A stretch of DNA of 63,902 nt, counting the filler, from Octopus bimaculoides (lineage: Eukaryota): the NCBI RefSeq assembly GCF_001194135.2. It is 4 parts of 4 records of this genome, joined end to end, with 100 filler letters (N's around TTAATTAATTAA, not from the genome) between each part and the next. Parts side by side here need not be neighbours in the genome. Positions count along the whole stretch, not along the records: positions 1 to 28,669 come from NC_068982.1; 3 more parts are not named here. One strand, given 5' to 3'. Numbering within the stretch: position 1 is the first letter of the stretch; each line of letters opens with the position of its first letter. The notes under the pieces are model-generated. The model did no database searches. It was not told the origin of the DNA and was given only the letters and a program-made list of their open reading frames with translations. The position numbers and the translations under genes are program-made. Shown in pieces: positions 1,096-26,829 of this stretch.

Positions 1096-1116
1096 TACAC
1101 AATATTGCTTCTAAGT

Positions 1117-1500
1117 GGAGGCGCAATGGCCCAGTGGTTAGGGCAGCGGACTCGTGGTCGTAGGATCGTGGTTTCGATTCCCAGACCGGGCGTTGTGAGT
1201 GTTTATTGAGCGAAAACACCTAAAGCTCCACGAGGCTCCGGCAGGGGATGGTGGCGAAGCCTGCTGTACTCTTTCACCACAACTTTCTCTCACTCTTACT
1301 TCCTGTTTCTGTTGCACCTGTATTTCAAAGGGCCAGCCTTGTCACACTCTGTGTCACGCTGAATCTCCCCCGAGAACTACGTTAAGGGTACACCTGTCTG
1401 TGGAGTGCTCAGCCACTTGCACGTTAATTTCACGAGCAGGCTGTTCCGTTGATCGGATCAACTGGAACCCTCGTCATCGTAACCGACGGAGTGCCAAACA
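1117..1500 (+). mobile_element. SINE family A, full length (tRNA-derived head)
   Basis: A-box TGGCCCAGTGG and B-box GGTTTCGATTCC. Near-identical copies at 7404, 19006, 24551 and 49943. Flanked by a ~13-bp TSD attgc(t/c)tctaagt (1104-1116 / 1503-1515). Confidence 0.92.
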
Positions 1501-2723
1501 CCATTGCCTCTAAGTCCAACATTTTCAGCATTTTACTAAATCTAGTAAAATAATAATGATTAAAGTAAAGGAACAATACTCAATAGTGAACGGTAGTTTT
1601 AGGTCGTAAAACATTTACCTTTAATAATTAAGTTGGAGTTAGTGTATTTAATAGAATAATCATTACAAATCTAATCAAGAATAACAATGCGGTGAGGAAA
1701 CTACAATATTAATCAATGAGTGATATTGTGTTAACCAATCTAGCAAGTATCGGTCATGTTTCCGTGTTATTGAACCTCTTCTCTGAAGGATAAAATATAC
1801 CGTATTTACTTATGTGAAGAGGAAAGAAACACTAAGCAGATATTGTACATGCATTGATAGAACAACTTCATATATTAATTAATTAATTACTGGAATACCA
1901 TATGCATGCAAGACAATAGCGAAGTTAATGCTAATGTATATAATGTAGGGAGCATTAAATATCTAGTCATTAGTAATTAAGCAGTGAGGAAATGAAGCTA
2001 TTAATCATTGAATAATATAACATTAATTATTCCCGGAAGTACATCTCAGTGTATAAGAGTCTAAAAAGCTCATAAAGTCCGTATTATGCTTTGCCTCGAA
2101 TTTTAACATGTTTATATTAAATAGAAGAACTGAGATGAAAATGCAGTGTGATTCAATGAGTCAACGGTTTTAAGGATCGGAGCAACTTAACGGGATATCT
2201 AACAACTCACCACTTTGCTTTGCTTTATTTTTTTGCGAATAAAATTTAAAAAAAAATAATTATAAAAAAAACTATTTGCACACATACATACACAAACACA
2301 AGCAAAACAAACAAAAAACAAACAATTAGAAAGAAAAAAACCCACTGAATTCGAAATACAAATCCTGTAGGTTTTTAACTACATAAACAGTAGCAGTAGC
2401 AATAGCAACAATCACACACACAAAATAAAGAAGGAAAAGAAAACAATTAAAAACAAAGTATCTATATTTACTGATTTATAGCCTGGCATCTAGTCTAAGA
2501 GGCTAGTCTTTTTCAGAGTCTTCTGTTACGGTGTTAAAGTCAGACGAATGAGTCACTAAATGGTTTATGGTAGAGTGTCAGTTGTAAATTATGTTCTGTT
2601 GATTCACGGTTGCTGTGAATGTCCAACTTTTTAATCGCTTTAGACAAGCAATCACTCACTGATAGCTGGTGGTTGAGGTACTTAGTAACAACCGGGAAAT
2701 TTAGAGTTTCTGCTTCATTGCAG

Positions 2724-4498: not shown

Positions 4499-4781
4499 CA
4501 GTGGTTCTCAATCGGGGTCCACATGGCCCGTGGGGATCTATATGAGATATTGTTGTTAAAATTTATGTTAAAATTTATGTGCAATAAATTGGTTACACTT
4601 CTACAATACACAAAAGATTTTAATTTTTTAATTACAATTCATAATAATATCTAATCATAAAAATACAGTAAGATTTTTTTATATACATCAAATGGCTATG
4701 GAGGCTCCGGCAGAGTAAAATAGGAATCAAAGGGGTTCATAGGAAAAAAAACCCCATAAAAAAAATAGTTGAGAACTACTG
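4499..4781. mobile_element. hAT-like MITE (~280 bp)
   Basis: TIRs CAGTGGTTCTCAA / TTGAGAACTACTG. Internal body (atttatgtgcaataaa..ggtta..cttctacaatacacaaaa) is shared with the copies at 19695 and 38438. Confidence 0.75.
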
Positions 4782-5155
4782 AGCTAGACTCTGTAATCTA
4801 TCAAATTCCTGTTTTAAAGGTAAAAAGGATATACTAACTTATTAAATGAACGAAGTGTAGTGTGAAAGAACCAAAGGTTCATAGGAAGAGAGAAACATTA
4901 AAAAAATAGTCAAGAACTACTGAGCTAGACTCTGTAATCTATCAAATTCCTGTTTTAAAGGTTAAAAAGGATATACTAACTTATTAAATGAACGAAGTGT
5001 AGTGTGAAAGAAACAAATGTTCATAGGAAAAAAACATTAAAAAATAGTTGAGAACTACTGAGTTAGACTCTGTAATCTATCAAATTCCTGTTTTAAAGGT
5101 AAAAAGGATATACTAACTTATTAAATGAACGAAGTATAGTGTGAAAGAAACAAAT
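4735..5155. repeat. Tandem triplication, ~140-bp unit
   Basis: gttcatagga...aaatagttgagaactactgagctagactctgtaatctatcaaattcctgttttaaagg...gaacgaagtgtagtgtgaaagaa occurs three times head-to-tail. Confidence 0.95.
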
Positions 5156-5344
5156 TAAGTCGGAGAATTTATCAGGCAAAGATATAAAAAATAAAAAAAA
5201 TTCACTAAAAACGTTACCTCATCAGATAGATATTTAACGAGCCACCCAGTCATCTAAGTGTGTATTATTTGACAATAACGAAACTTTGATTATAAATGGA
5301 GCATTAAAGTAATCTATGAAAATAATGTAGTAAATAATATGATA

Positions 5345-6470
5345 TTTATTTCTAATTTTGATACAAGGTCAACACTTTTTGAGAGGAAAGGATTAATCGA
5401 TCACATCGACGCCAGTACTTCATTGGCTCTTTACTGTATTGACCCCGGAAGGAAGAAAAACCTATGTTGACCTTGACGGGATTTGAACTTGATTAGAAGC
5501 TGGTAAAAATACCGGAAGCATTTTCTTCTCGACGCTCTATCGACTTTGTCAATCTACCATACAATAATTCAACGTAAGAAAAGCTTCTGATTTAGACACA
5601 AGGATAGCAATTTGAGTTTAATCGATACCAGCAACCTCAGTGCTTGTTAGGTACTTATTTTATCGACCTCGGAAGGATGAAAAGTAAAGTTAACTCGACG
5701 GGACTTGAACCCAAACCATAACGGACCAGAAGAAATACTGCAAGGCATTTTCCCAACGCGGTTATATTTCTCATAGATCGCCGCCCTGTTGTTCAACGTA
5801 GTAATTATTATCACTGTAGGCACAAAACCCAAAATTTGGTGGGAGGAGGCTTATCGATTACACCGACCTCAATTCCCAACTAGTAATTATATCATCGATT
5901 CCGAAAAGATGGCAGGCAAAGCCGACCTAGCCGGAATTTGAACTCAGATCATAAAGCCAGAAGAAATGTCATGGCGCTCAGCATTTTGTACTTTATGCTA
6001 ACGATTCTCTCTGCTTTCGCCTTATAGCTTAACGTATTAATAGTTATAAATTTTAGCACAGGACCAACAATCTCGGGATTAGGGGTATGGCAATTACAGC
6101 GACACCAGAGATCAACTAGTACGTGATTTATCGATCTCGAAAGAATGAAAGGCAATTTGAACTGAGAACGTAATGACAGATGAAATGTTGCTAAGAATTT
6201 TATTTGGCGTGCTAACAATGTTGCCAGCTCGCTCCCTTATAGTTCATAGTAATAATCGCTTCTACTATAGGCACAAGGCTTGAAATTTTGTGGGTGAGAG
6301 CTAGTCATTTACATTGACCCCTGTGCTCAGCTGGTACTTATTTTATTGACCCCAAAAGGATGAAAGGCAAAGTCGACCTCGGCGGCATTTGAACTCAAAA
6401 TGTGAAGACGGATGCAAGACTGTTAAGCATTTTGCTCGGCGTGCTAACGATTCTACCAGCTCGCAGCCTT
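5345..6470 (-). mobile_element. Train of five degenerate family B SINEs in the same orientation
   Basis: The motif ttatttta(t)tcgacc..gaaggatgaaag(g)caaagtcgacc..gaatttgaact recurs at about 5430, 5655, 5890, 6125 and 6340. Confidence 0.85.
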
Positions 6471-7403
6471 TATAGTGTCAAAGCAATGGTAAAAATGAAT
6501 AATATCAAACGATAAGCTAAAATCTTTTTCAGTTTAAATAGAAAATTGAAGAATAAAAAACAAAAAAACAAAAAACAAAACAAAATGAAAAAAAAAAAAA
6601 CAAGGGAGAATAGATAATAATAAGCCAAACACATGAGTTAACAGTTAAACTATCTGAATAAATAATTACATAAGTATATAAAGGAATGAATTTACCTCAT
6701 AAACAGAAAAACAGAGAAATGTCATGATAAGTAGTATTTTCTTAGCTGAAATTTATCTGGTAATTTTTTCAGCAGTTTGCTATTTTAACTGCATTTATGT
6801 ATTATATATTAATATAATATAAAATAACACACACGCACACGCACACAAATATGCATGTGTACATGTGTGTGCATTTACGAGCGCGTATAGGTATGTTTGT
6901 ATTTGTATCAGTGTATGCATCTGTATGAAGTAGGCAGATATCTACCCTTAATTACTTTCCCACTTTCTTTATCTGTGCACTAAATAATTAATACGCATCT
7001 CAAGCCATATGCGTCTGTTTTTCCCCAAACTGACTTGAATCTTATAGAGTAAATGGCGAACAGTTAAAACTTAAAATGACTCTTCTAAGCCTTATCACCT
7101 GCTCAAGTTGTCCAATAAACTAACTAATTAATATACAATGTTGATTAATTTTACTTTACACACATTTCCTTTCCAAATTCTGCATTCACCGCAAGCTTGT
7201 ATTCTTAAACAATCTCCTCTTTTGACTGTAACTTCCCTTATTTTTCGGTATTTCTTCCATTAATTCTTTGCTAGTTTAAATGGGAAATATAGCTGACATG
7301 CACTGTAAAAGGAGAATCAGAAGTAACGAGCTATCGATAGAGCAATGAAAGAACGTCATTATCTGTGTGTATGTATGTATGTATGTATGTAGGTATGTAT
7401 GTA

Positions 7404-7748
7404 GGGGGCTCAATGGCCCAGTGGTTAGGACAGCAGACTCGCTGTCATAGGATTGCGGTTTCGATTCCCAGACCGGGCGTTGTGAGTGTTTATTGAGCGA
7501 AAACACCTAAAGCTCCACGAGGCTCCGGCAGGGGATGGTGGCGAACCCTGCTGTACTCTTCCACCACAACTTTCTCTCACTCTTACTTCCTGTTTCTGTT
7601 GTGCCTGTAATTCAAAGGGTCAGCCTTGTCACACTGTGTCACGCTGAATATCCTCGAGAACTACATTAATGGTACACGTGTCTGTGGAGTGCTCAGCCAC
7701 TTGCACGTTAATTTCACGAGCAGGCTGTTCCGTTGATCGGATCAACTG
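7404..7748 (+). mobile_element. SINE family A, 3' end lost in gap
   Basis: Colinear with 1117-1500 up to the N gap. Confidence 0.9.
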
Positions 7749-8037
7749 NNNNNNNNNNNNNNNNNNNNNNNNNNNNNNNNNNNNNNNNNNNNNNNNNNNN
7801 NNNNNNNNNNNNNNNNNNNNNNNNNNNNNNNNNNNNNNNNNNNNNNNNNNNNNNNNNNNNNNNNNNNNNNNNNNNNNNNNNNNNNNNNNNNNNNNNNNNN
7901 NNNNNNNNNNNNNNNNNNNNNNNNNNNNNNNNNNNNNNNNNNNNNNNNNNNNNNNNNNNNNNNNNNNNNNNNNNNNNNNNNNNNNNNNNNNNNNNNNNNN
8001 NNNNNNNNNNNNNNNNNNTATATATATATATATTATC

Positions 8038-8076
<39 letters not shown>

Positions 8077-8447
8077 GTAGACATTCACACACGTGCCCGC
8101 ACACACACATGAAAGAGAAAAAAATCCGATATGTATGTGCAAATGCGTTCTATTATTTGAAGCTTGTAGAGAGATTGGGGTAGAGATGGGTGAAAATAAG
8201 TATGCACGTGGGAAGAAGAATAACAGAGTGGAGGAGTTAACGAGAAGTAGAAGCAATGTGGAGTATATTTTTGTGAAAGAACAGAACGTCTTGCGTAGCA
8301 TTATGGGATATACATACATCTTGCTGCCAATTTAGTGAAAACACTAGGACAACATGAAGGACGACAGAAGATATGGTAAATATACGTTTCTAGAAAATAT
8401 CTTTGCTTCATGTGAATCATTATTTAAACAGTATATCTGATGTCAAA

Positions 8448-8662
8448 AGGAGGCGAGCTGGCAGAAACTTTAGCACGCCGGGTGAAATGCTTTGCGGTAT
8501 TTCGTCTGCCACTGCGTTCTGAGTTCAAATTCCGCCGAGGTCGACTTTGCCTTTCATCCTTTCGGGGTCGATAAATTAAGTACCAGTTGCATACTAGGGT
8601 CGATCTAATCGACTGTCCCGCTCCCCCAAAATTTCGGGTCTTGTGCCTAGAGTAGAAAAGAA
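8448..8662 (+). mobile_element. SINE family B (B2 tail), full length with 16-bp TSD
   Basis: ggaggcgagctggcagaaac...gagttcaaattccgccgaggtcgactttgcctttcatcctttcggggtcgataaattaagtaccag...gtagaaaagaa. TSD tatatctgatgtcaaa at 8432-8447 and 8663-8678. Confidence 0.95.
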
Positions 8663-9942
8663 TATATCTGATGTCAAATCACATTCAAATTCTCAAGATC
8701 CCAACAGGTGTAGTAGAATGATCAAATGAGATGAGCACAATACTTTATAGGAAAGATTATGCAAGAGGGAAAGTGATGAATACACTGGTAAACTGAATGA
8801 TTTCGTGATTAAGTTGGAGATGAAATTAGACCTCGTAAATACTAGTTCCCAATCGGTCCTGAGGTTTACACAAATATGCTTAGTTTTTGTTAAATCTGGA
8901 GGATGGAGCAGAGCCCATGGCCATTGCATTCTTTCGGAGATTGGTGAGACTAGTGTCCTTAATGTTCTGTTGGAGCTTTTGCCAGTCAACGCTCGCAAGA
9001 AAGACGTGGGCATGAAAGAGCTAACACTGGAAGACGATGTTCTTGAGGAAGATAATTGGTCATAATGGTTAATGCGAGGAATGGGAGGTTGAACGCAACA
9101 ACTGTGACGATAGGTGGAGAGACGAGTATGCTGGGAGTGCCGGAGTAGCAGAGCTATGAGACTAACCAGCTCCAAGAAACAGAAATCATTGTTATCATTG
9201 TCACTACTATCGCTACTGGTGTTGCTGTTGTTATTGTTTTTCTGCTGTGTAGTTTGATGTTATCAGGTTAAACAGCACCAACATCAACAACAGGATAGGA
9301 AAGTCTCTTTTTAAGCAACGTTCAGTCATGCTCATCCCAACTTTTTGTACATTATCCACGTTGTTGTTTGTTTCCTTCTCTTTTAAGAAGACACAACTGA
9401 TAATGACCTACGAATTCTATTTAGATCCTGTAAAGAGTAGAGTGGAGCAATGCTAGGATGCTGGGCAGGTAAAACAGAGGTACGAAGATCATAACCTTAC
9501 CCTGGTATCAAGTATATTTATTCAAACAAGGTAAAGTGGTGGCTTAGCATAATCGCTAAAGCGTCGGACAAAATGACATGACATATAGAATTTGCTCCGG
9601 GTCTTCGCGCTTGAAGTTCAAATATGAACGAGGTGATCATACCAGAGTCGTAATATATTAATAGAATACTAGTTAGGTACTCGATTTATGACCTATTATG
9701 AGAGTTAGGAGTATATACATCAAGATGTAGTTTGGGGGAACTTGTCTATTACAACTACTATTTCGAACGATCATATAGAGCGTCACTCAAGTAAGAGACG
9801 TGTGTGAATTTATGTAGATTAATAAGGAGTGGGGTAAAAGATCCTAAGCTTAATAACTGCTGAGAATTGCTAAGTTCAGAGTGATTAGGAGGTGTTAAAA
9901 TGTTACGAAAACACTATTGTATATAAATGAGTATATTATTAA

Positions 9943-11002
9943 CCTTTCCGCTAGAGATTGACATTCATATTCGGCACCAAGGGCGGAGTAACTACGTCTG
10001 TATGTAAGAATTTTGTTTATGTATGTATGTATGAATGTATGTATGTATGTCAGGTCACTTTTATTGCTACTGGTAAAATGTAACCCAGTGCAACCTGCTG
10101 CATGGTCGGGCCGTAGGCATCTAAATTAGCAACCCTACAAAACCTGTTTAACAGGGAGAATGGCTTTCGAGGGTCAACCTACAGGATGAGAAAAGAACCC
10201 GGCGGAGAGGGCGGATGAATTCAGTAAAGTCAACGGCAACCCAACAGCTAAGGGATCTCTACCCAAGTCTTTCTTTAGACGTACCTCGAGGAGAAGGTAC
10301 TTCTAAAATAACACCCACCTCATTGCAAACTCAGAGATCTTGCTCTTGCTTCTTTCTGGACAGCTTGGTTTTCTAAGGGAGTGCCTAAGCAGTATTGTTC
10401 AAGCTGTTGTTGACTTTAGATTTCAGCACAAGCATTGCTGACAACCATTGTCGTTAACAGCTTGGATAAGATAATTTGACAGTGATGGTCATACTCGTCA
10501 ACGAGTTAGCAGCCACCTCGTACGTATCTATGCATGTATATGTATGTATGTATGTATGTATGTATGCATGTATGGTGTAGGCAAGTATATATTAACATCA
10601 TAAATTGGGATTGCATTGCATAAAGTTTCACCGACGCAAAAAGCATGCCTGATTACCGGATGCTAATTACTCAGTATTAAGTGTCCGATCGATCACTCAA
10701 TCTGTTTTTGCATTTACGAAACAACTTTAATTGAGGCCAGTCTGTATCAGACATTTAAATCCTACAACCTGTATGGTATGTAGTTTTCTTTCGTTAATAT
10801 ACAACTTTTTGTCTCTCCCTCCTCACCTCTCTCGCTTTGTCACTGCCTTTTCAGACTGTCTGTTAGTCTTGCTCTCTCTCTCTGTCTTTATCTGTCTCTG
10901 TCCGTCTGTCTGTCTGCCTGCCTGCCTGTCTGTCCGTTTGTCCGTCTGTCTGTTTGTCTGTCTCGCTTTCTCTTTCACTTTCTCTCTCTCTCTCTCTCCC
11001 CC

Positions 11003-11040
<38 letters not shown>

Positions 11041-11151
11041 GTGTGTGTGTATGTGTGTGTGTATGTATAATCTATATACATATATGGATGTATATATATG
11101 TGTATACATATATATATATATATGCGCACGTGTGTATATATNNNNNNNNNN

Positions 11152-11202
<51 letters not shown>

Positions 11203-11242
11203 CCAGAGAAGTAGGAGGAAGAAAAATACATGTAGATATTTA

Positions 11243-11275
<33 letters not shown>

Positions 11276-11624
11276 CTGTGTATGTGTGTGAGTGTGTATA
11301 CGTATCTGTATATATAAATGTATGCATGCGAGGAGAAGAGATAGAAACAAAAGAAAAAAAGGATGGAGAGATGTTTGTTTTGATTATTAATATCACTGCG
11401 TCGTGCAATGTAATGAGGAAGTAATAGAAAGAACAAAAACAAAGAAGAAAGAAAATCCTTGAAAAAATATAAAAATCACAAAGAAAAAGAAGAAAAATCA
11501 CGCAAGACTAAAGATTAATAAAGAAAACAAACAAAACTTAGACCAAAACTGAATACCTTCTGTCTGTTTCTGCTTGTACACGAACAACGCACACACACAC
11601 ACGTTTGAATGCATACATACAGCC

Positions 11625-11664
<40 letters not shown>

Positions 11665-12190
11665 NNNNNNNNNNNNNNNNNNNNNNNNNNNNNNNNNNNN
11701 NNNNNNNNNNNNNNNNNNNNNNNNNNNNNNNNNNNNNNNNNNNNNNNNNNNNNNNNNNNNNNNNNNNNNNNNNNNNNNNNNNNNNNNNNNNNNNNNNNNN
11801 NNNNNNNNNNNNNNNNNNNNNNNNNNNNNNNNNNNNNNNNNNNNNNNNNNNNNNNNNNNNNNNNNNNNNNNTATATATACGCGCACACACATATGTAAGT
11901 ATGTATATATATATACATATATACACATATATATGTGTATGTATATATATACATATATATATATACACAATATATATGTATGTATATATATACATATATA
12001 TATATACACAATATATATGTATGTATATACATATACAATATATATATATATATATGCATACGAACAAACGTTGATACGCATATACTTTTCTGCAACCGCC
12101 GCCGTGTAGACTCACGCAGAAGCTCTCATATACAGAGGCAGTTACTCCGCCCTTGGTGCCGAATATGAATGTCAATCTCTAGCGGAAAGG
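9943..12190. mobile_element. Putative non-autonomous piggyBac-type element (TTAA-flanked, 51-bp perfect TIRs)
   Basis: TTAA(9939-9942)|CCTTTCCGCTAGAGATTGAC... and ...GTCAATCTCTAGCGGAAAGG|TTAA(12191-12194). CCY termini plus TTAA are piggyBac hallmarks. No transposase inside. Confidence 0.5.
10050..10520 (+). mobile_element. GC-enriched fragment, possibly the 5' leader of an RTE-type LINE
   Basis: Non-repetitive GC-richer block. The motif aggagaaggtacttctaaaataacacc resembles RTE 5' UTR sequence as I recall it. No ORF support. Confidence 0.25.
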
Positions 12191-12994
12191 TTAATAATAT
12201 ACTCATTTATATACAATAGTGTTTTCTTAACATTTCAGCACCTTCTAATCACTCTGAACTTAGCAAAACTTAACAGTTATTAGGCTTAGGAACTTTTGCC
12301 ATACTCCTTATTAATCTCCTTAATTTCACACACGTCTCTTGCTTGAATGACGCCCTATATGACCGTTCGAAGTAGTAGAAGCAGTTGACAAATTCTCTCA
12401 AATTATACTTTGATATATGTAATTGCGAATACACACTCTAGGCCACAGATCGTCGTGAATACGTAAGTAGTATTTTGCATATATATTATCATCCTGGTAG
12501 GATGAACGGCAAATATCACATCAGTCAGATTTGAACTTGAAGCGCGAAGACCTGGAACACATGCTGCAAGTAATTTTATCCAACGTTCTAACGATTCTGC
12601 CAAGCCACCACTTTACTGAATATATGAAGCATATATTTAAATAGATATATATATATATAAATAAATATATGAAGCATACATTTAAATAAATATATGCTTC
12701 ATGTCAGGACAAGTTTAAGATCTTTGTATTCATATGCTATGCGCTTGAAGCTCTGTCTTTATGTTTAACTTAAAAAGAAACAAAACTAGTGTATTTCTTT
12801 TATTTCACATTATTTCCTTTCAATATAAGTTAAGAGCGTGGTTTTTTTTTTAACAGTACTGCCACCACTACTGTAGTGACCTGCAGTTATACTCAGTAAG
12901 GAATGAGACGAGAGTAATTATTTTTAACATAAGCATGAGACTAGAAATTTGGCAGGAGGAGATAAGTCGATGAATACTAATCTCGTATTTCCAC

Positions 12995-13188
12995 ACGGGC
13001 AGCATTTTCGGGGGAAGGGATGAGTCGATTATATCGACCCCAGGGTTCAACTGGTACTTATTTTATCGACCCCGAATGGATGAAAAGTAAAGTCGACCTC
13101 AGCAGAATTTGAAGTCAAAACGTAGCGACGGGTGAAAAACTGCTAAGCATTTCGTCCGGCGCGCTAACGATTCTGTCAGCTCACTGCC
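12995..13188 (-). mobile_element. SINE family B
   Basis: Reverse complement contains ggcagtgagctgacagaatcgttagc...gacttcaaattctgctgaggtcgactttacttttcatccattcggggtcgataaaataagtaccag. Confidence 0.85.
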
Positions 13189-13484
13189 TTAATAATTATA
13201 ATGATGATGGTGATGATGATGATGATGATGAACTTATTGTATAAAGTGCTCAAGTGCACTATTATGCTCAGGTGTGCTACAGGTGCCTTGCTGCTTATGA
13301 TATCTTTCCGTGGAATTTCTGGACAGTGGTGCTTTGAAATCTGAAGAAAGTTGTTGCTTATTTTTTTCCATACAGAAACGAAATATTTACGCTTCCATGG
13401 CAAGTAAAAATGAGAAAGAAGTCAAACAAGTAGCAGAATATATATGGCAGATTTCACTAAAAACTGATAAAAATAAGAGAAAGA

Positions 13485-13598
<114 letters not shown>

Positions 13599-14074
13599 GA
13601 AAAGCATAGTTGGAAAAAGCAAAACAAGTGAAAATAGAGTGAAATAGAGTTTAAAACATGAAAGGGACACGAAAATATGGGAAATTATCCTAATTTATTC
13701 CATGAATCTGGAAACAGGTACTCCCTTACGCCTCTGTCTATGAAGAGAACTGATAGCAAATAACTACTGAAAGCAAAAACAGTGTAGAATTTTACTTTAA
13801 CGGTTAGTCTAATTTGCAAACTGTGCGCTTGTCGGTCACGTGATTAAATATTTAATGAATATTCATGGTCAGAACAGCGTGCATTGGAAATTCTCAGATT
13901 AATTGAAAGTACATAATCTACAAGTTTTTTTTGTCGTGTAAATGTAAATAGATGTAACTGTATCTAGTTTTTCTTTTCGAACTGGGAATTTAGCGTTAGT
14001 GTATAAGCAGAGTATAACAAGATATATTCATATCTCTTTCTCTCTTTCAGGTTTCCACAGCGAAACGCTTGCAA

Positions 14075-14076
<2 letters not shown>

Positions 14077-14107
<31 letters not shown>

Positions 14108-14165
14108 GCTACTACTACTACTGCTACTGCTACTACTACTGCTACTGCCACTGCTACTGCTGCTG

Positions 14166-14204
<39 letters not shown>

Positions 14205-14210
14205 ATACTG

Positions 14211-14257
<47 letters not shown>

Positions 14258-14264
14258 GCCACTG

Positions 14265-14358
<94 letters not shown>

Positions 14359-14370
14359 TGATAATAATAA
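14077..14370. repeat. Compound (ACT/GCT)n-(TAA)n microsatellite
   Basis: Direct reading; it explains the poly-T/Y/S/V/I ORFs in the track. Confidence 0.97.
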
Positions 14371-15042
14371 CCAAAGCGTCTCCGCTGTGCCGCATCTGCA
14401 ATAGAGTGGATGAAACCATTGCCCATATCACGAACGAATGCCCTAGACTTGCCCAAAACCGCTACGACCAGGTAGCGAAAGTGCTACATTGGAAACTGTG
14501 CGAAACTGGGAGCTAGAGAGATGCAAGACGTGGTATGAGCACAAACCGCAGAGACTGGCAGAATCGGAGACTAGCAAAATCCTCTGAGATTTCCCAATCC
14601 AAACAAATCAGGTCTTAGAGTATAACAGACCGGACCTAGTGGTGTTGGACAGGGTGCACCACATGCGCTATGTAGTTGACGTTGCATGCTCCTTTGACCC
14701 ACGAATAGCCAAGAAGGAAAGCAAAAAGATAGATAGATAGATACAACCCTCTTAAGTACGAAATAGCCCGGCTATGGAAAATGAAGAAGGTGAAGACAGT
14801 GCCAATTATTGATGGGTCCTTGGGAACCGTAGAAGAAGGCATCAAGGGTAATATAAAGGAAACTGAATTAGAGTGCCCAGTAGAACTTTTACAACAGGTT
14901 TGCCCCCTTGGCACGGCCATATTAATCAAGAAAGTATTAGATAGCTGAAAAGAAGGAATAGCATGGTACCGTAGGTTGCAGGTAGTAAGCTCGCTACGCA
15001 TACAAGACTCCAGAAGCTCCAAGAAAACCTGTGATAAAGAGA
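14371..15042 (+). mobile_element. 5'-truncated R4/Dong-clade non-LTR retrotransposon (CCHC knuckle + restriction-like endonuclease), pseudogenised
   Basis: Translation across frameshifts gives CRICNRVDETIAHITNECP...VAKVLHWKLC...WYEHKP...KIL*DFPIQT...NRPDLVVLD...VVDVACSFD...KESKKIDRY..LKYEIARLW...VPII.GSLG...LGTAILIKKVLDS*. Flanked by (TAA)n. Confidence 0.9.
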
Positions 15043-15053
15043 TAATAATAATA

Positions 15054-15300
15054 ATCATAGTAGGTGCCTTAGGTATAATAAAAAAATATTCAGACAAATA
15101 CATAACAAAAACACCAGGACTTACAAATATATATAACATACAGAAAATTGCACTACTGGGCACTGCACACATCCTACGCATAACACTTTCAATACAGTAA
15201 ACATAAGAACACCACAGCAAACCACAGCACATACCCAAGGCGCACAGAGCTGCGCTCGGTAGTGAAGTGAAAGCACGTTATAAAAATAAAACTACTGAAC
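15054..15300 (+). mobile_element. Second R4/Dong-clade 3' fragment (different family)
   Basis: IIVGALGIIKKYSDKYITKTPGLTNIYNIQKIALLGTAHILRITLSIQ* (stop at 15198-15200), a ~100-bp 3' UTR, then (AAT)n. Confidence 0.85.
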
Positions 15301-15328
15301 AATAATAATAATAATAATAATATTAATG

Positions 15329-15375
<47 letters not shown>

Positions 15376-15510
15376 CCTTTCTACTATAGGCACTAGGCTT
15401 GAAATTTTGCGGGAGGGGCCAGGTCATCCTCGGCGGAATTAGAACTCAGAACATAAACGCGGACGAAATGCCGCTAAGCGTTTCATCCGGGGTGCTAGCA
15501 ATTCTACCAG
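15376..15510 (-). mobile_element. Family B2 SINE, internally deleted
   Basis: ccttctactataggcactaggcttgaaattt tail joined to ctcggcggaattagaactcagaac head; the central domain is missing. Confidence 0.7.
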
Positions 15511-15989
15511 ACATTCTTCAGAATGTAAAGAATGCAAATAGTGAGAGACAGAATTTTAAAATTTCATCGTTTGTTAAAAATATAGAAAATTCTTTTTTGT
15601 ATCAACGCGATTTCAGATGTGGAATTTAAGTGTTAATATAGTTATGAGCACGTATTTTACAAGTCAATTATTTCACAATTCAATTATTTTACAATTCAGT
15701 TATAACTTACTACTTCTATAGTGTATCATAAACCACCAAGAAACGGCAGGTGTATTTAACTACAGGTATATTAACCAACAACGTGCAGGTAATTAAATCG
15801 TTAAGAATACACATACACAAACCTTTTAAAGGTACCTATTCTTATATGTGTAGCTACAAACAGATAAAATCACATACACATATTGTTAGGTTTATACGCA
15901 ATAAAGTTCACTATGTATACCCAGCATACTCAAAAGCACTCAATCGCTTATACCCAGTGATGTATATACATGTATGTGTGAGTGTGTGT

Positions 15990-16375
<386 letters not shown>

Positions 16376-16468
16376 ACTACTACGTGTTTTCTATACTGAG
16401 CATATGTGTAGCTCCTACCTAATATTTATTTATATATATCTATATATGTATATCTATATGTATATATA

Positions 16469-16912
16469 GGCGTAGGAGTGGCTGTGTAGTAAGTAGCTAG
16501 CTTACCAACCACATGGTGCCGGGTTCAGTCCCACTGCGTAGTACCTTGGCCAAGTGTCTTCTACTATAGCCTCGGGCTGACCAAAGCCTTGTGAGAGGAT
16601 TTGGTAGACGGAAACTGAAAGAAGCCCTTCGTATGTATGCATATATGTATGTATGTATGTACGTTTGTATGTATGTATGTATGTATGTATGTATGTATGT
16701 ATATATATATATATATATATNNNNNNNNNNNNNNNNNNNNNNNNNNNGATGTTGGTGTGTTTACGTCTCCGCAATTTAGCAGTTCGGCAAAACAGATCGA
16801 TAGAATAAGTAGTAGGCTTACAAAGAATAGGTCCTGGGGTCGATTTGTTCGACTAAAGGCGGTGCTCCAGTATGGCCACAGTCAAATGACTGAAACAAGT
16901 AAAAGAATAAAC
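16469..16912 (+). mobile_element. SINE family C, full length (tRNA-like head + CORE-like domain + internal microsatellite + 3' half)
   Basis: ggcgtaggagtggctgtgtagtaag...gggttcagtcccactgcgtagtaccttggccaagtgtcttctactatagcctc, (TATG)n, then gttggtgtgtttacgtc...gactgaaacaagtaaaag. The accttggNcaagt motif resembles the CORE domain. Confidence 0.9.
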
Positions 16913-18707: not shown

Positions 18708-19005
18708 ACTACGCTCATTATTATATTACGAGTTGATTTTTTACTTTATGATTTTTTACGCATGCTAGCCACTGATATTATTGTGAATTATGAATAGTAA
18801 TATCCTTATATATTTTAATATACATACATACATGCATGCATAATACATCAGCATGACCGCAGCCACTTGGCTGAAACACATAAATAAAGAAAAAATACAT
18901 GCATACATACATACATACATACATACATACATACACACATATATATGTACGTATATATATGCAAATTAGATACATACATATATATATAAATATGTATGTA
19001 TGCCT

Positions 19006-19390
19006 GGAGGCGCAATGGCCCAGTGGTTAGGGCAGCGGACTCGTGGTCATAGGATCACGGTTTCGATTCCCAGACCGGGCGTTGTGAATGTTTATTGAGC
19101 GAAAACACCTAAAGCTCCACGAGGCTCCGACAGGGGATAGTGGCGAACCCTGCTGTACTCTTTCACCACAACTTTCTCTCACTCTTTCTTCCTGATTCTG
19201 TTGTACCTGTATTTCAAAGGGCCAGCCTTATCACACTGTGTCACATTGAATATCCCAGAGAACTACGTTAAGAGTAGACGTGTCTGTGGAGTGCTCAGCC
19301 ACTTGCACGTTAATTTCACGAGCAGGCTGTTCCGTTGATCGGATCAACTGGAACCCTCGACGTCGTAAGCGACGGAGTGCCAACAACAAC
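19006..19390 (+). mobile_element. SINE family A, full length
   Basis: Colinear with 1117-1500; ends gacggagtgccaacaacaac. Confidence 0.92.
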
Positions 19391-19431
19391 ATGTATGTAT
19401 GTATTTATGTATGTATGTATGTATGTATGTA

Positions 19432-20702: not shown

Positions 20703-21531
20703 NNNNNNNNNNNNNNNNNNNNNNNNNNNNNNNNNNNNNNNNNNNNNNNNNNNNNNNNNNNNNNNNNNNNNNNNNNNNNNNNNNNNNNNNNNNNNNNNNN
20801 NNNNNNNNNNNNNNNNNNNNNNNNNNNNNNNNNNNNNNNNNNNNNNNNNNNNNNNNNNNNNNNNNNNNNNNNNNNNNNNNNNNNNNNNNNNNNNNNNNNN
20901 NNNNNNNNNNNNNNNNNNNNNNNNNNNNNNNNNNNNNNNNNNNNNNNNNNNNNNNNNNNNNNNNNNNNNNNNNNNNNNNNNNNNNNNNNNNNNNNNNNNN
21001 NNNNNNNNNNNNNNNNNNNNNNNNNNNNNNNNNNNNNNNNNNNNNNNNNNNNNNNNNNNNNNNNNNNNNNNNNNNNNNNNNNNNNNNNNNNNNNNNNNNN
21101 NNNNNNNNNNNNNNNNNNNNNNNNNNNNNNNNNNNNNNNNNNNNNNNNNNNNNNNNNNNNNNNNNNNNNNNNNNNNNNNNNNNNNNNNNNNNNNNNNNNN
21201 NNNNNNNNNNNNNNNNNNNNNNNNNNNNNNNNNNNNNNNNNNNNNNNNNNNNNNNNNNNNNNNNNNNNNNNNNNNNNNNNNNNNNNNNNNNNNNNNNNNN
21301 NNNNNNNNNNNNNNNNNNNNNNNNNNNNNNNNNNNNNNNNNNNNNNNNNNNNNNNNNNNNNNNNNNNNNNNNNNNNNNNNNNNNNNNNNNNNNNNNNNNN
21401 NNNNNNNNNNNNNNNNNNNNNNNNNNNNNNNNNNNNNNNNNNNNNNNNNNNNNNNNNNNNNNNNNNNNNNNNNNNNNNNNNNNNNNNNNNNNNNNNNNNN
21501 NNNNNNNNNNNNNNNNNNNNNNNNNNNNNNN

Positions 21532-21569
<38 letters not shown>

Positions 21570-22084
21570 CTTAGCTTCCCATTCATATTTTAATTCTGAC
21601 TTATCTGTCCTTTCATTTATTCGATTTCATTCATTTATACAGCCGGTATTTTTCCTGTTATTGATGGATACATTCCGCTTCTTCTTATATATTCTTTACA
21701 TATTTCTTACTTCTCCGATTTCTATATATTTCTTGGAATGAATATTTGTGTATTCATTCCCTCCCTCTTTCATAATACTTTCAGCGTTCGTGTGTTTCCG
21801 ATTTTTTCTCTCAGTTTCTATATAATCATTCGAGCGTTCATTCATTCATTTATATATATATACATACATACATAGGCTTCTCCCAGTTATATATTTCATT
21901 TTCATCCATTTATACTACCGGTCTTTCATTCATACAAATCTCTATATTTTCATGTCTTTCCTTTTTCTTTACTTATATTTATATATGCACTGTTTCATTA
22001 TTTTGATTTCTTGCTTTTACATTCCTTTCCATTTTTCCATTCATTTATATCACAATTGTTTCGTTCATTTATAATTTTATTTAT

Positions 22085-22824: not shown

Positions 22825-23667
22825 CAGGGCCGGTGAATATACTGTCGTCTAAATTACGCAAAAATGAAAATAACACTTACATCTCATTTTAGCAGATATA
22901 TTTACCAAAGTTACATCAAAATATCTTGAAATACTAAAGAGTAAATTTATTCAATAAAATCACCGTTGGCTTCAACCACAGCATCCAAACGACTTCAGAA
23001 TCCTCTGCAACTCTTCTGGATGGTTCCCTTGTTTAAATTCGTGAATGTTGCCATAAACCTTGCCTTCAGTTCATCTTTGGTGTTACAAGGAGTTTTCTTG
23101 GTCTCCCGCTCAACTGCACTCCACACATGATAATCAAGGGGGTTGCAGTCTAGAGAGTTAGGTGGCTAGGAGTGATGTGGTCGGAGAAATTGTCTGATAG
23201 CCATGACTGAGTTCTCCTGCTTGTGTGGCATGGTGTATAGTCCTGTTGCTAGACATAGGGTCTTCCAGCAGCCACCCTGTTGGCCCATGGCATCACTATC
23301 TCCTCCAGGAACTTGATGTAGGCCCTCGTGCTGAATCTGAGGCCGTGTGGGAAGATGAATGGAGACATAACGTCGCCACCACAAATGATCACTCCAAATA
23401 ACATGGTGTTGATTGGATGTTTGATTTTTATCATTCTCGGTACATATCCTCAGACGGACACCCAAACACTTAGAAATGTTCGTATTGTAGCTTCCGGCGC
23501 GAATGCCATGTCGTACAGCATGTCGTTTCCAAAAATTCTGGCGTTTTCCTCACAGACGGTGCCCGACTGACCTTACTATACTGTGTAGTCGACAAAATAA
23601 AAATCAAACGGTGCGCATGTGCGAAATAAAAAATATAAAATGGTGACAATTTACACATCGCACCCTG
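22825..23667 (-). mobile_element. Internally deleted Tc1/mariner transposon, maT (DD37D)-like
   Basis: TA|CAGGG at both ends with imperfect TIRs. Minus strand encodes an HTH start (KRHAVRHGIRAGSYNTNISKCLGV) fused to ...FGVIICGGDVMSPFIFP...PYV*QQDYTPCHTS...PNSLDCNPLDYHVWSAVE...VEANGDFIE*. D-to-D spacing is 37 only after restoring an inferred ~7-bp deletion. Confidence 0.85.
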
Positions 23668-24550
23668 TACACACACAGACACACACACACATCTAAGAAA
23701 AAGTTTAAAATAATAGCCATTACATATATTTTCTTTATGCAAAAATTTCGTAAGTCCAAAGGGTTGCTTTTTCAGAAAACGAAAAAAAATTGTTTCACCA
23801 TTCCATAGCAAAACCGTCGTACTCCACTTTGATAATTTTTGGTATATTGGCATCTGAAGCAGCTAGAGATACGATAGTTTGGCCAAAAGAACCGGCTATT
23901 GCAAGCAAAAATANNNNNNNNNNNNNNNNNNNNNNNNNNNNNNNNNNNNNNNNNNNNNNNNNNNNNNNNNNNNNNNNNNNNNNNNNNNNNNNNNNNNNNN
24001 NNNNNNNNNNNNNNNNNNNNNNNNNNNNNNNNNNNNNNNNNNNNNNNNNNNNNNNNNNNNNNNNNNNNNNNNNNNNNNNNNNNNNNNNNNNNNNNNNNNN
24101 NNNNNNNNNNNNNNNNNNNNNNNNNNNNNNNNNNNNNNNNNNNNNNNNNNNNNNNNNNNNNNNNNNNNNNNNNNNNNNNNNNNNNNNNNNNNNNNNNNNN
24201 NNNNNNNNNNNNNNNNNNNNNNNNNNNNNNNNNNNNNNNNNNNNNNNNNNNNNNNNNNNNNNNNNNNNNNNNNNNNNNNNNNNNNNNNNNNNNNNNNNNN
24301 NNNNNNNNNNNNNNNNNNNNNNNNNNNNNNNNNNNNNNNNNNNNNNNNNNNNNNNNNNNNNNNNNNNNNNNNNNNNNNNNNNNNNNNNNNNNNNNNNNNN
24401 NNNNNNNNNNNNNNNNNNNNNNNNNNNNNNNNNNNNNNNNNNNNNNNNNNNNNNNNNNNNNNNNNNNNNNNNNNNNNNNNNNNNNNNNNNNNNNNNNNNN
24501 NNNNNNNNNNNNNNNNNNNNNNNNNNNNNNNNNNNNNNNNNNNNNNNNNC

Positions 24551-24869
24551 CAGACCGGGGCGTTGTGAGTTATTGAGCGAAAACACCTAAAGCTCCACGA
24601 GGCTCCGGCAGGGGATGGTGGCGAACCCTGCTGTACTCTTTCACCACAACTTTCTCTCACTCTTACTTTTGTTTCTGTTGTGCCTGTAATTCAAAGGGTC
24701 AGCCTTGTCACACCGTGTCACGCTAAATATCCCCGAGAACTACGTTAAGGGTACACGTGTCTGTGGAGTGCTCAGCCACTTGCAGGTTAATTTCATGAGC
24801 AGGCTGTTTTGTTGATCGGATCAACTGGAACCTTCGACGTCGTAAGCGACGGAGCGCCAACAACAACAA
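24551..24869 (+). mobile_element. SINE family A, head lost in gap
   Basis: Colinear with other A copies from cagaccgggg onward. Confidence 0.9.
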
Positions 24870-25735
24870 TACTTATATAGAATTCTTTCACTGTCATAGA
24901 ATTCTTTCACGTCTCTACATGTGTTTCGTCTCTCCATATATTTTGTTTCGTTTTTTGTTCTTATCATCCGATCATAAATTTTGTATAATCATTCTTTCAA
25001 AATATTTACTTTGTTAGTAATATCTGTAGTTTTCGTTTCATTTTCTCTTTTTTTTTTGTCATTCACTCTGTCCTTCATTCAAATCTCTTTCTACATTCAT
25101 GTTTCTTTTTATCTTTTCGTTCAGATCCTTTCTATTATTCACCATTTTCATTGTTTCAAACTTCTTTTCATCTTTCCATGTCTTTTAAGTTATTTTTCGT
25201 TTCATCCATTTATATAGTAACTATTTTGTTGTTTATCTTTGTCTTTACATGACTTTAATTTCTTTTGTTCGTCATTTAAACATTCATCTATTAGCGGGTT
25301 CGTTCTTTTTGATTTATCACTATATTTGCTGTTTGTATTTCTTACACTTATTTTCATTCATATATTTATATACTCACTATTGTAACTTACTTTTCCATTC
25401 TGTTTTTAACAGTTAAATTTTGATTTATATAATTTCTTATTATTTGTGTGTGTGTGTGTATTCGTTCCTGGTCCATTATTTTACTATTGAAATAAATAAT
25501 TAATATTCTGTCATTAAATATGGCTATATATATTCCCAAAATATAGAAATAACAGAGAAATGTTTCAAAAATTGGAAATAGAATATATATTACATATAAA
25601 CGTATGTATATANNNNNNNNNNNNNNNNNNNNNNNNNNNNNNNNNNNNNNNNNNNNNNNNNNNNNNNNNNNNNNNNNNNNNNNNNNNNNNNNNNNNNNNN
25701 NNNNNNNNNNNNNNNNNNNNNNTATATATATACAT

Positions 25736-25974: not shown

Positions 25975-26271
25975 AGAGGGCGCGTGGCTAAGTGGTTAAG
26001 GCATTCGACTTACGGTCGTGAGTTCAATTTCCGGCGACAAGACACTTTAATTCACGTTGCTCCAGTCTACTCAGCTGGCAAAAATGAGTAGTACCTGTAT
26101 TTCAAAGGGCCAGCTTTGTGACACTTTGTGTCATGCTCAATCTCCCTGAAAACTACGTTAAGGGTACACGTGTCTGTGGAGTGCTCGGCCACTTGCACGT
26201 TAATTTTAACGAGCAAGCTGTTCCGTTGATCATATCAGCTGGGACCCTCGTCGTCATAACCGACGGAGTGT
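25975..26271 (+). mobile_element. SINE family A variant (different head and body, same 3' tail)
   Basis: gagggcgcgtggctaagtggttaagg...gagttcaatttcc head, a distinct middle, then the A tail gtacctgtatttcaaagggccagc...gacggagtg. Confidence 0.8.
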
Positions 26272-26476
26272 TCGTTATATATATATATATATATCTATAT
26301 ATATNNNNNNNNNNNNNNNNNNNNNNNNNNNNNNNNNNNNNNNNNNNNNNNNNNNNNNNNNNNNNNNNNNNNNNNNNNNNNNNNNNNNNNNNNNNNNNNN
26401 NNNNNNNNNNNNNNNNNNNNNNNNNNNNNNNNNNNNNNNNNNNNNNNNNNNNNNNNNNNNNNNNNNNNNNNNTATA

Positions 26477-26526
<50 letters not shown>

Positions 26527-26829
26527 GGGTAAAATTAATTAATAATTAATGATTTTACCAAGTAGTTCGGTATGTGTTAAAATAACCTTTATCGGTAACT
26601 TTATACAAAAATTCTATAATTATAAGCATAATTATAATTAGGGTTCAGCAAAAATTGCTTCACCACAAACCGAAATTTAGAAATAGCAGTTAAATACTAT
26701 TCCTCTACCGTAAGATATCTCCCAGACAGCAATACTCTTATTTTACTAAACTCATCTTTAGGGTTCCGGATCATTTAATGCTAATTCGGCTATCGGCTAC
26801 CGCTCAAAGTTTACAAAGACATTCAGAGT

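What the first reader, a model, noticed from the sequence alone, without database searches (positions are those of the whole stretch)
9531..12616. Old inverted duplication with an 87-bp perfect core centred on a TTAA/piggyBac-type junction
Seen: arms of ~480 bp are ~86% identical over 9761-9906 (21/146 mismatches) and more diverged further out, where they share one decayed SINE head. They are 100% identical over 9907-9993 / 12140-12226. At 14% divergence, the chance of 87 mismatch-free bp is about 1e-6. The perfect core comprises 36 bp of flank ending in TTAA plus a 51-bp CCTTTCC... TIR. Removing 9943-12194 leaves a palindrome of ~800 bp centred exactly on TTAA. Ordinary transposition does not duplicate the flank in inverted form. 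Inference, three options: (a) an element inserted into the apex of an existing palindrome; (b) aberrant or sister-chromatid transposition copied one end plus its flank, followed by local gene conversion; (c) selection maintains an RNA duplex, such as an ADAR or splicing structure.
Basis: partly seen in the sequence, partly recalled or inferred. Interest (0 to 1): 0.75.

Follow-up and report, generated by a model that had tools for sequence, protein, structure and literature searches.

The report
Inverted SINE pair with identical patch
The 3-kb "palindrome" is most likely two old copies of one short retroposon (SINE) lying tail-to-tail around a microsatellite-rich spacer, with one 87-bp stretch later made identical; this is an ordinary repeat-landscape feature, not a piggyBac insertion into a palindrome.

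Summary
Arms 9531-10009 and 12124-12616 are inverted copies (391/498 columns, 79%) and hold an exact 87-bp patch (9907-9993 = reverse complement of 12140-12226). No permutation of the mismatches reproduces that patch (0/20,000).

The piggyBac reading is not supported. Identity does not change at the TTAA. TTAA occurs five times per arm. The spacer has no transposase remnant.

The outer edge of both arms falls, within 2-3 bp, on the 5' end of the commonest SINE-like retroposon in the window (11 other copies, some with target-site duplications). The left arm ends 2 nt before the first sense-strand TTTT and runs into a (TATG)n tract. (TATG)n tracts flank other retroposons here.

I therefore read each arm as one whole retroposon unit of about 480 bp, from a sister lineage of that SINE. 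Outside the patch the arms differ by about 21%, as old copies do. The patch has diverged homologous sequence on both sides, which is the signature of a short ectopic gene-conversion tract. A conserved 3' module or an assembly error remain possible.

No other copy of the 3' 310 bp, no reads and no orthologous locus could be obtained, so copy number and assembly are untested. The two arms lie in different gap-free blocks. Interest is low.

The parts
9531..10009 (+). Left arm: one retroposon unit ('SINE-B'), sense on + strand. It has a SINE-like head with A/B-box-like motifs, a body, and a 3' part.
   Evidence: Aligns to the right arm at 79%. Positions 9539-9680 match the SINE-A model at positions 9-150, E 1.2e-3. 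No TTTT on the sense strand.
12124..12616 (-). Right arm: second copy of the same unit, sense on - strand.
   Evidence: Positions 12611-12483 match the SINE-A model at positions 6-133, E 1.9e-11. It keeps a 13-bp and a 5-bp segment that the left arm has lost.
9531..9700 (+). Part of the left arm homologous to the abundant SINE-A family. The homology begins at the SINE 5' end.
   Evidence: Alignment A1, nhmmer. Against the SINE-A consensus there are 45 shared-derived changes and 17/14 private ones.
12440..12616 (-). Same SINE-A-homologous part in the right arm.
9907..9993 (+). Perfect 87-bp patch, left copy.
   Evidence: 87/87 identical to the reverse complement of 12140-12226. 0/20,000 permutations reach this length. 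No RNA structure of its own (z +1.1).
12140..12226 (-). Perfect 87-bp patch, right copy.
9939..9942 (.). It is one of five TTAA in this arm.
   Evidence: There is no change of identity here.
12191..12194 (.). Mirror-image TTAA in the right arm.
10010..10050 (+). End of the left unit: TTTT at 10011-10014 followed by a (TATG)n tract (10017-10050). This may be a pol III stop, a retroposon tail or a target microsatellite.
10051..10575 (+). Unrelated element X with its own (ATGT)n at 10525-10575. It has (TATG)n on both sides, so it was inserted into the microsatellite next to the left arm.
   Evidence: No Pfam match.
10576..12123 (.). Rest of the spacer: (CT)n, (GTCT)n, (TG)n and (TA)n microsatellites, short unique stretches and two assembly gaps (11142-11151, 11665-11871), both inside (TA)n.
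   Evidence: No non-simple inverted homology inside it.

Best explanation
Two decayed copies of one SINE-type retroposon of about 480 bp lie tail-to-tail, on opposite strands, on either side of a microsatellite-rich stretch. I call it 'SINE-B'. It is a sister lineage of the SINE-like family that fills this window.

Each arm is a whole mobile unit. It starts at the retroposon's own 5' end, where there are A/B-box-like pol III promoter motifs, and it ends at a T-run and (TATG)n tract.

The copies have since diverged by about 21%. Later, a short non-crossover recombination event between the two neighbouring inverted copies (ectopic gene conversion) overwrote up to 87 bp of one with the other. That produced the perfect patch.

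The TTAA and the 'TIR' are by-products of looking at an inverted repeat.

Shown: the repeat, the patch, the coincidence of the 5' boundary with the SINE 5' end, and the retroposon nature of the related family. Inferred: that the 3' 310 bp belongs to the mobile unit, that the two copies inserted independently, and that gene conversion made the patch.
For: 1. Homology starts sharply at 9531 / 12616. The first 15 bp are identical and the flanks just outside are unrelated.
2. That point is position 1 of a 223-bp model built from the window's SINE-A copies. armR matches model positions 6-133 (E 1.9e-11) and armL positions 9-150 (E 1.2e-3).
3. SINE-A is a genuine retroposon family: 11 further copies in 28 kb. 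Target-site duplications of 15 bp (copy 8446-8667) and 12 bp (5'-truncated copy 909-1095) are visible.
4. Against the SINE-A consensus the arms share 45 derived changes and carry 17 and 14 private ones. They are sister copies of a separate lineage with balanced decay.
5. The left arm has no TTTT on its sense strand over 479 bp (2.6 expected, P(0) = 0.057) but four AAAA. The right arm has one TTTT and four AAAA. The first TTTT in the left arm lies 2 nt past the end of homology. This fits a pol III transcript that spans the whole arm.
6. (TATG)n tracts flank several other retroposons here: SINE-C copies 7378 and 19005, and element X. Clustering of insertions around this microsatellite is therefore expected.
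7. Divergence outside the patch is 83/387 = 21%, with a transition:transversion ratio of about 1.5 and 4-5 indels. This is the range seen between other SINE copies in the window and argues for old copies.
8. The patch has diverged homologous sequence on both sides (13/76 mismatches outside, 4/16 inside). From established knowledge, interlocus gene-conversion tracts run from tens to a few hundred bp and occur between nearby repeats, Alu elements included.
Against: - No other copy of the 3' 310 bp exists in the remaining 26 kb, even with nhmmer --max. A 'SINE-B' family is therefore inferred from two copies only.
- No target-site duplication could be shown for either arm.
- The right arm is not followed directly by a simple-repeat tail.
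- ARAGORN and Rfam do not recognise a tRNA in the head.
- If SINE-B is a rare family, two copies within 3 kb would be an unlikely coincidence.
- Conversion between sequences only 80-86% alike is inefficient.
- Nothing here excludes an assembly error, because no reads were available.
Confidence: 0.45

Rival explanations
1. Same inverted pair of retroposon copies, but no conversion. The two copies are young products of two diverged source genes (subfamilies) that share an identical 3' module, the part a partner LINE's reverse transcriptase recognises. The differences are between masters, and the patch is a conserved functional module.
For: SINEs are modular and often share 3' tails with partner LINEs and with each other (PMC4758252, PMC4824008). 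In the head, matches between the arms cluster at the A-box-like start (15/15) and around the B-box-like GGTCTTCGCGCTTnAAGTTCAAAT, and the two A-box differences fall on degenerate positions. The patch lies near the 3' end of the unit.
Against: Divergence of 21% with several indels is large for subfamilies. One indel is a 13-bp loss inside a segment conserved in all SINE-A copies. The last 16 bp before the tail, which should be the most constrained, differ at 4 positions. Any post-insertion decay comparable to other copies in the window would have hit 87 bp. The 3' end shows no significant similarity to other (TATG)n-tailed elements here once the microsatellite is removed.
Confidence: 0.17
2. 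A local inverted duplication copied one SINE plus about 300 bp of its flank into inverted orientation. The mechanism would be replication template switching or fold-back priming at the microsatellites. Decay and a later conversion patch followed.
For: The 3' 310 bp is found nowhere else in the window. No target-site duplications surround the individual arms. The spacer is full of slippage-prone and self-complementary (TA)n tracts.
Against: The outer breakpoint would have to fall within +/-3 bp of the SINE 5' end (about 1-2% by chance). The inner one would have to fall at a T-run/(TATG)n tract. This still needs a second event to explain the patch.
Confidence: 0.13
3. Assembly or scaffolding artefact. 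The perfect patch, or the inverted orientation and spacing of the arms, was produced by short-read assembly, gap closing or polishing in a repeat-dense region.
For: The window has eight internal N runs. The arms lie in different gap-free blocks joined across two gaps within (TA)n. An exact 87-bp inverted duplicate is the kind of node that confuses de Bruijn assemblers.
Against: The arms differ by 14-33% immediately around the patch, so reads of 100 bp or more from the two arms would be distinguishable. Both arms are continuous sequence with no N within 1 kb of the patch on the outer side. The patch does not coincide with a contig end.
Confidence: 0.1
4. One reading: a non-autonomous piggyBac-type element (9943-12190, TTAA duplication, 51-67 bp terminal inverted repeats) sits at the apex of an older palindrome, or an aberrant transposition copied one end with its flank.
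For: TTAA abuts CCTTTCC... on both sides. PiggyBac elements exist and were recently active in Octopus vulgaris (PMC13282606).
Against: No break in identity at the TTAA. There are five TTAA per arm and eight palindromic 4-mers in the core. No transposase trace. No second copy of the terminus in the window or in any collection scanned. From my own knowledge, the terminus starts CCT rather than the CCC typical of the superfamily. The model needs an exact hit on the symmetry centre of a palindrome.
Confidence: 0.04
5. Selection keeps an 87-bp perfect RNA duplex, for example a hairpin-RNA/siRNA source or an ADAR substrate with a regulatory role.
For: If transcribed through, the arms would form a long double-stranded RNA with an 87-bp perfect stem. 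Cephalopods edit RNA heavily (general knowledge; PMC5625713 listed, not read).
Against: No evidence of transcription could be obtained. The rest of the stem is left to decay. The spacer is over 2 kb of microsatellite. The core has no structure or Rfam match of its own.
Confidence: 0.02

Closest known systems
Inverted pairs of SINE copies (e.g. inverted Alu pairs in primates)
   Same: Two copies of one short pol III-type retroposon in opposite orientation within a few kb. They can form a long hairpin in DNA or RNA and can recombine with each other.
   Different: The unit here is long for a SINE (about 480 bp). Its 3' 310 bp is known from these two copies only. Copy number, partner LINE and target-site duplications are not established.
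Ectopic (interlocus) gene conversion between dispersed repeats, as described for Alu elements and palindrome arms
   Same: A short tract of complete identity embedded in otherwise diverged paralogous sequence, between copies close together on one chromosome.
   Different: Donor, acceptor and timing cannot be determined without an outgroup locus. The surrounding identity (80-86%) is lower than in most documented cases.
Modular 'jigsaw' SINEs of molluscs and SINE/LINE shared 3' tails (PMC4758252, PMC4824008)
   Same: The head is shared with another family (SINE-A) for about 170 bp and is then followed by a different body and 3' end. A simple-repeat tract lies at the 3' end.
   Different: No partner LINE or shared tail could be demonstrated. 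No match to a CORE domain.
piggyBac-superfamily non-autonomous elements (TTAA-specific DNA transposons)
   Same: TTAA on both sides of an inverted-repeat-bounded segment. The terminus begins with CC.
   Different: The inverted repeat does not stop at the TTAA. There is no transposase remnant and no other copy. The resemblance is fully explained by the surrounding inverted repeat.

Membership tests
piggyBac-superfamily DNA transposon | Element bounded by terminal inverted repeats whose homology stops at the target site | tested here: not met
   Perfect identity continues 36 bp outside the TTAA, and about 79% identity continues about 410 bp outside it.
piggyBac-superfamily DNA transposon | TTAA target-site duplication | tested here: inconclusive
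   TTAA is present at 9939-9942 and 12191-12194. However, any palindromic 4-mer inside an inverted repeat is mirrored automatically. There are five TTAA per arm and 7.5 per kb in the window.
piggyBac-superfamily DNA transposon | Transposase (DDE_Tnp_1_7) or its remnants inside. Non-autonomous copies lack it. | tested here: not met
   Six-frame translations of 10010-11141 and four frames of 11152-11664 give no Pfam family at E <= 1.
piggyBac-superfamily DNA transposon | Other copies with the same termini at unrelated TTAA sites | not testable with these tools
   None in the window. No eukaryotic genome collection was reachable. Pattern scans of metagenome, viral and prokaryotic contigs were empty.
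SINE (non-autonomous pol III retroposon) | Homology to an interspersed family whose members show retroposition hallmarks | tested here: met
   Both arms match the SINE-A model (E 1.9e-11 and 1.2e-3). SINE-A copies carry 15-bp and 12-bp target-site duplications, one on a 5'-truncated copy.
SINE (non-autonomous pol III retroposon) | Copy begins at the family's own 5' end | tested here: met
   Arm homology starts at model position 1 +/- 3 bp in both arms, and the flanks immediately outside are unrelated.
SINE (non-autonomous pol III retroposon) | tRNA-, 5S- or 7SL-derived head with internal A and B boxes | tested here: inconclusive
   A-box-like TRGCNNA... and B-box-like GTTCAAAT motifs are present and conserved between the arms. 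ARAGORN and Rfam find no tRNA in the arms or in a SINE-A copy.
SINE (non-autonomous pol III retroposon) | No pol III terminator (TTTT) inside the unit on the sense strand | tested here: inconclusive
   Left arm 0 (2.6 expected, P = 0.057). Right arm 1. Four AAAA in each. The first TTTT in the left arm is 2 nt after the homology ends.
SINE (non-autonomous pol III retroposon) | Target-site duplications around each copy | tested here: not met
   Best left-arm candidate is a non-adjacent 9-mer (61/500 shuffles as good). The right-arm match is microsatellite only. An insertion (X) and microsatellites obscure the 3' flanks.
SINE (non-autonomous pol III retroposon) | Many dispersed copies of the whole unit | not testable with these tools
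   Only the two arms carry the 3' 310 bp within 28.7 kb.
CORE-SINE superfamily (octopus OR1 or OR2, named differently by the two papers; PMC4758252, PMC4824008) | Central CORE domain | tested here: not met
   Local alignment of the SINE-A consensus and both arms to a MIR consensus recalled from memory gives z of -0.1, -0.8 and 0.2. The reference was not from a database, so this is a weak test. I do not file the arms as CORE-SINE.
Ectopic gene-conversion tract | Patch of identity flanked on both sides by diverged homologous sequence, longer than chance allows | tested here: met
   0/87 mismatches, against 13/76 just outside and 4/16 just inside. 0/20,000 permutations reach this length.
Ectopic gene-conversion tract | Pre-conversion state visible in an outgroup or orthologous locus, or phylogenetic incongruence along the copies | not testable with these tools
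   No orthologous locus or further family member was available.
Hairpin-RNA / ADAR substrate | Transcription through both arms, small RNAs or clustered A-to-G changes | not testable with these tools

The most novel reading that the evidence does not exclude
The 87-bp perfect duplex is maintained because the locus is transcribed as a hairpin whose stem feeds an siRNA or ADAR pathway. Alternatively, the CCTTTCC... terminus belongs to a TTAA-specific element that preferentially integrates at the apex of hairpin-forming inverted SINE pairs.
Probability: 0.05. Interest if true: 0.6.

Novelty: already known. Interest (0 to 1): 0.18.

Why it matters
If my reading is right, this is routine repeat biology in a SINE-rich cephalopod genome, with three modest uses:

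- It gives a worked example of how an inverted repeat can mimic a 'TSD plus TIR' transposon junction.
- It flags a possibly undescribed SINE lineage of about 480 bp, related to the window's dominant SINE.
- It is a candidate case of short-tract conversion between neighbouring inverted SINEs, a process that shapes hairpin-forming (and hence ADAR-relevant) structures.

It would matter more only if the patch proved to be selected or the terminus proved to be a real transposon end.

Tried and rejected
1. External copies through proteins. Three homologous-protein searches all returned no candidate: the core peptide, a 133-aa ORF at 27396-27794, and an antisense translation of the SINE-A consensus. 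Exact look-ups of 10 window ORFs and of ORF 8693-9175 found nothing. The collection evidently holds no octopus repeat ORFs, so sampling the genome this way failed.

2. Exact DNA scans. Three arm or core patterns (22-29 nt) in metagenome contigs (two scans), viral contigs and prokaryotic genome contigs all gave zero.

3. Literature and reads.
- A full-text search for six 14-16-mers from the arms gave zero papers.
- The O. vulgaris repeat paper has no library in its supplement.

4. Shared LINE-type 3' tail. Similarity between the arm's 3' end, element X's 3' end and the right arm's inner flank looked significant with the microsatellite included. It is not significant without it (z 1.5, 1.0, 0.4). 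No similarity to the 3' ends of other (TATG)n-tailed elements. One marginal AT-rich match at about 22040-22074 did not extend.

5. Family assignment of the head.
- CORE-SINE assignment: not supported.
- tRNA origin of the head: not detected by ARAGORN or Rfam.

6. Rfam matches in the spacer are microsatellite look-alikes of miRNA families, far below gathering scores.

7. My by-eye impression that ORFs at 26828-27797 and 23166-23853 are LINE- or mariner-like got no Pfam support. I dropped it.

8. Baseline for long exact runs. SINE-C copies that are 87-93% alike share runs of 47-89 bp, as expected for their identity. SINE-A pairs share at most 35 bp. Long runs are therefore normal only for young copies, which the arms are not.
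Full report
**Observation**

The repeat finder reports inverted arms 9712-10009 / 12124-12421 (298 nt, 87%) and two outer pieces reaching 9531 / 12616. A gapped alignment of 9531-10009 with the reverse complement of 12124-12616 has 391 identical of 498 columns.

Identity by segment is as follows.

| Segment | Identity |
|---|---|
| 9531-9640 | 81% |
| 9641-9700 | 70% |
| 9701-9760 | 67% |
| 9761-9830 | 89% |
| 9831-9906 | 83% |
| 9907-9993 | 100% |
| 9994-10009 | 75% |

After 10009 there is no similarity. Spreading the 87 differences at random over the 478 columns gives a median longest exact run of 23 and a maximum of 73 in 20,000 trials. The 87-bp patch is therefore a real outlier.

**Gaps**

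The two N runs inside the finding (11142-11151 and 11665-11871) both lie within (TA)n tracts of the spacer. They interrupt neither arm, and nothing here is coding, so reading frame is not an issue.

The left arm lies in the gap-free block 8019-11141 and the right arm in 11872-16720. The spacing and the inverted orientation of the arms therefore depend on scaffolding.

**What the arms are**

The window is packed with short retroposons (self-comparison). I built a 223-position profile from five copies of the commonest one, 'SINE-A'. It finds 11 copies in 28.7 kb plus both arms.

- armR 12611-12483 matches model positions 6-133 (E 1.9e-11).
- armL 9539-9680 matches model positions 9-150 (E 1.2e-3).

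Projected back, model position 1 falls on 12616 and 9531. That is exactly where the arm-to-arm homology begins, with 15 identical bases and unrelated sequence just outside.

SINE-A behaves as a retroposon. Copy 8446-8667 is flanked by a 15-bp duplication (ATATCTGATGTCAAA). The 5'-truncated copy 909-1095 is flanked by a 12-bp one.

Relative to the SINE-A consensus, the arms share 45 derived states and carry 17 (left) and 14 (right) private ones. The left arm has lost 13-bp and 5-bp segments that the right arm and SINE-A keep. The arms are therefore sister copies of a lineage distinct from SINE-A, with balanced decay.

Beyond about 170 bp the arms no longer resemble SINE-A. This 3' part (about 9700-10009) occurs nowhere else in the window, even with nhmmer at maximum sensitivity.

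**Ends of the unit**

The left arm has no TTTT on its sense strand in 479 bp (2.6 expected; P(0) = 0.057) but four AAAA. The right arm has one TTTT and four AAAA. The first TTTT of the left arm is at 10011-10014, 2 nt after the homology stops. This is what a pol III transcript spanning the whole arm would look like.

That TTTT is followed by (TATG)n at 10017-10050. Such tracts also border other retroposons in the window. SINE-C copies at 7378 and 19005 sit inside (TATG)n. Element X (10051-10524) has (TATG)n on both sides. Microsatellites of this type seem to be insertion targets, which would favour clustering of insertions from either strand.

Three observations weaken the case:
- I could not demonstrate target-site duplications for either arm.
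- The right arm is followed by 63 bp of unique sequence before its microsatellite.
- Neither ARAGORN nor Rfam recognises a tRNA in the head.

I therefore call the head 'SINE-like with A/B-box-like motifs', not tRNA-derived.

**The piggyBac reading**

Nothing marks the TTAA at 9939-9942 as a boundary. The perfect stretch continues 36 bp outside it and the diverged homology about 410 bp further.

TTAA occurs five times in each arm and 7.5 times per kb in the window. The 87-bp core also contains TATA, ATAT and CTAG palindromes. Inside an inverted repeat, every palindromic 4-mer is automatically mirrored and followed by 'terminal inverted repeats'.

Six-frame translations of the spacer match no Pfam family. 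No second copy of the terminus exists in the window or in any collection I could scan. PiggyBac elements do exist in octopus genomes (PMC13282606), so the model is not absurd. It has no specific support here.

**The patch**

Outside the patch the arms differ at 83 of 387 aligned sites (21%). There are about 1.5 transitions per transversion and 4-5 indels. This is the range seen between other old SINE copies in the window; long exact runs occur only between young copies that are 87-93% alike. Copies that old cannot keep 87 bp intact by chance.

The patch is flanked on both sides by diverged homologous sequence, with 13/76 mismatches outside and 4/16 inside. This is the classical footprint of a short ectopic gene-conversion tract. 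The length is within the known range for such tracts (established knowledge, not tested here).

The alternatives I cannot exclude are:
- a 3' module conserved between two young copies from different source genes. SINE modularity and shared tails are documented (PMC4758252, PMC4824008). Against this, the terminal 16 bp differ, and the indels look like decay.
- an assembly or polishing error.
- selection on an RNA duplex. The core has no structure of its own (z +1.1) and no Rfam match.

**Independent insertions or one local duplication**

The coincidence of the outer boundary with the retroposon's 5' end would occur only about 1-2% of the time for an arbitrary breakpoint. Together with the inner boundary at a T-run and microsatellite, this favours two whole mobile units.

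The absence of other copies of the 3' part in 26 kb, and of target-site duplications, keeps a local inverted duplication alive. My estimates for each reading are in the table below.

| Reading | Probability |
|---|---|
| Two retroposon copies plus gene conversion | about 0.45 |
| Two retroposon copies sharing a conserved 3' module | about 0.17 |
| Local inverted duplication | about 0.13 |
| Assembly or scaffolding artefact | about 0.10 |
| piggyBac-type element | about 0.04 |
| Selected RNA duplex | about 0.02 |

**What failed**

Every route to sequences outside the window was empty:
- three protein searches;
- exact look-ups;
- four DNA pattern scans;
- a full-text k-mer search;
- a supplement check.

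A suspected shared LINE-type tail between the arm, element X and the right arm's inner flank vanished once the microsatellite was removed. A CORE-SINE assignment was not supported (the reference was recalled from memory). My by-eye calls of LINE- and mariner-like ORFs got no Pfam support.

**Verdict**

It is most likely ordinary: an inverted pair of old SINE-type copies with one homogenised patch. It is already known in kind and of low interest.

The decisive tests are:
- a genome-wide search with the arm and the core;
- the orthologous locus in sister species;
- long reads across the locus.

Noticed in passing
window 5343-6471 (- strand): Five consecutive SINE-A copies lie head-to-tail with a period of about 235 bp and are only about 50-58% alike. 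This is an old tandem array derived from a SINE.
   Followed up: partly
window 4734-5154: A 142-bp unit repeated three times in tandem at 92% identity (Tandem Repeats Finder score 714). It is unrelated to the finding.
   Followed up: no
window 1116-1504, 7378-7748, 19005-19392, 24550-24877, 26088-26302: Five same-strand copies of a retroposon of about 390 bp ('SINE-C') with a tRNA-like head (GGCGCAATGGCCCAGTGGTTAGG...), 87-93% alike. Copy 1116 has an 11-bp target-site duplication. Copies 7378 and 19005 are embedded in (TATG)n. Two copies are cut by assembly gaps.
   Followed up: partly
window 10051-10575: Element X (about 475 bp, no Pfam match) sits directly after the left arm with (TATG)n on both sides, as if inserted into that microsatellite. 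Its family is unknown.
   Followed up: partly
window 8446-8667 (+) and 12971-13191 (-): Two SINE-A copies also flank the finding in inverted orientation (76% alike). There is no further homology between 8400-9530 and 12617-13700, so this looks like coincidence in a SINE-dense region rather than a larger palindrome.
   Followed up: yes
window 26828-27797: Two ORFs (111 and 133 aa) looked to me like fragments of a LINE endonuclease. Pfam and the protein database gave nothing, so this is unverified.
   Followed up: partly
window 7749-8018, 16721-16747, 20703-21531, 23914-24549, 25613-25722, 26305-26472: Six further assembly gaps, most of them bordered by microsatellites or cutting repeat copies. 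The assembly of this region is fragmentary throughout.
   Followed up: no
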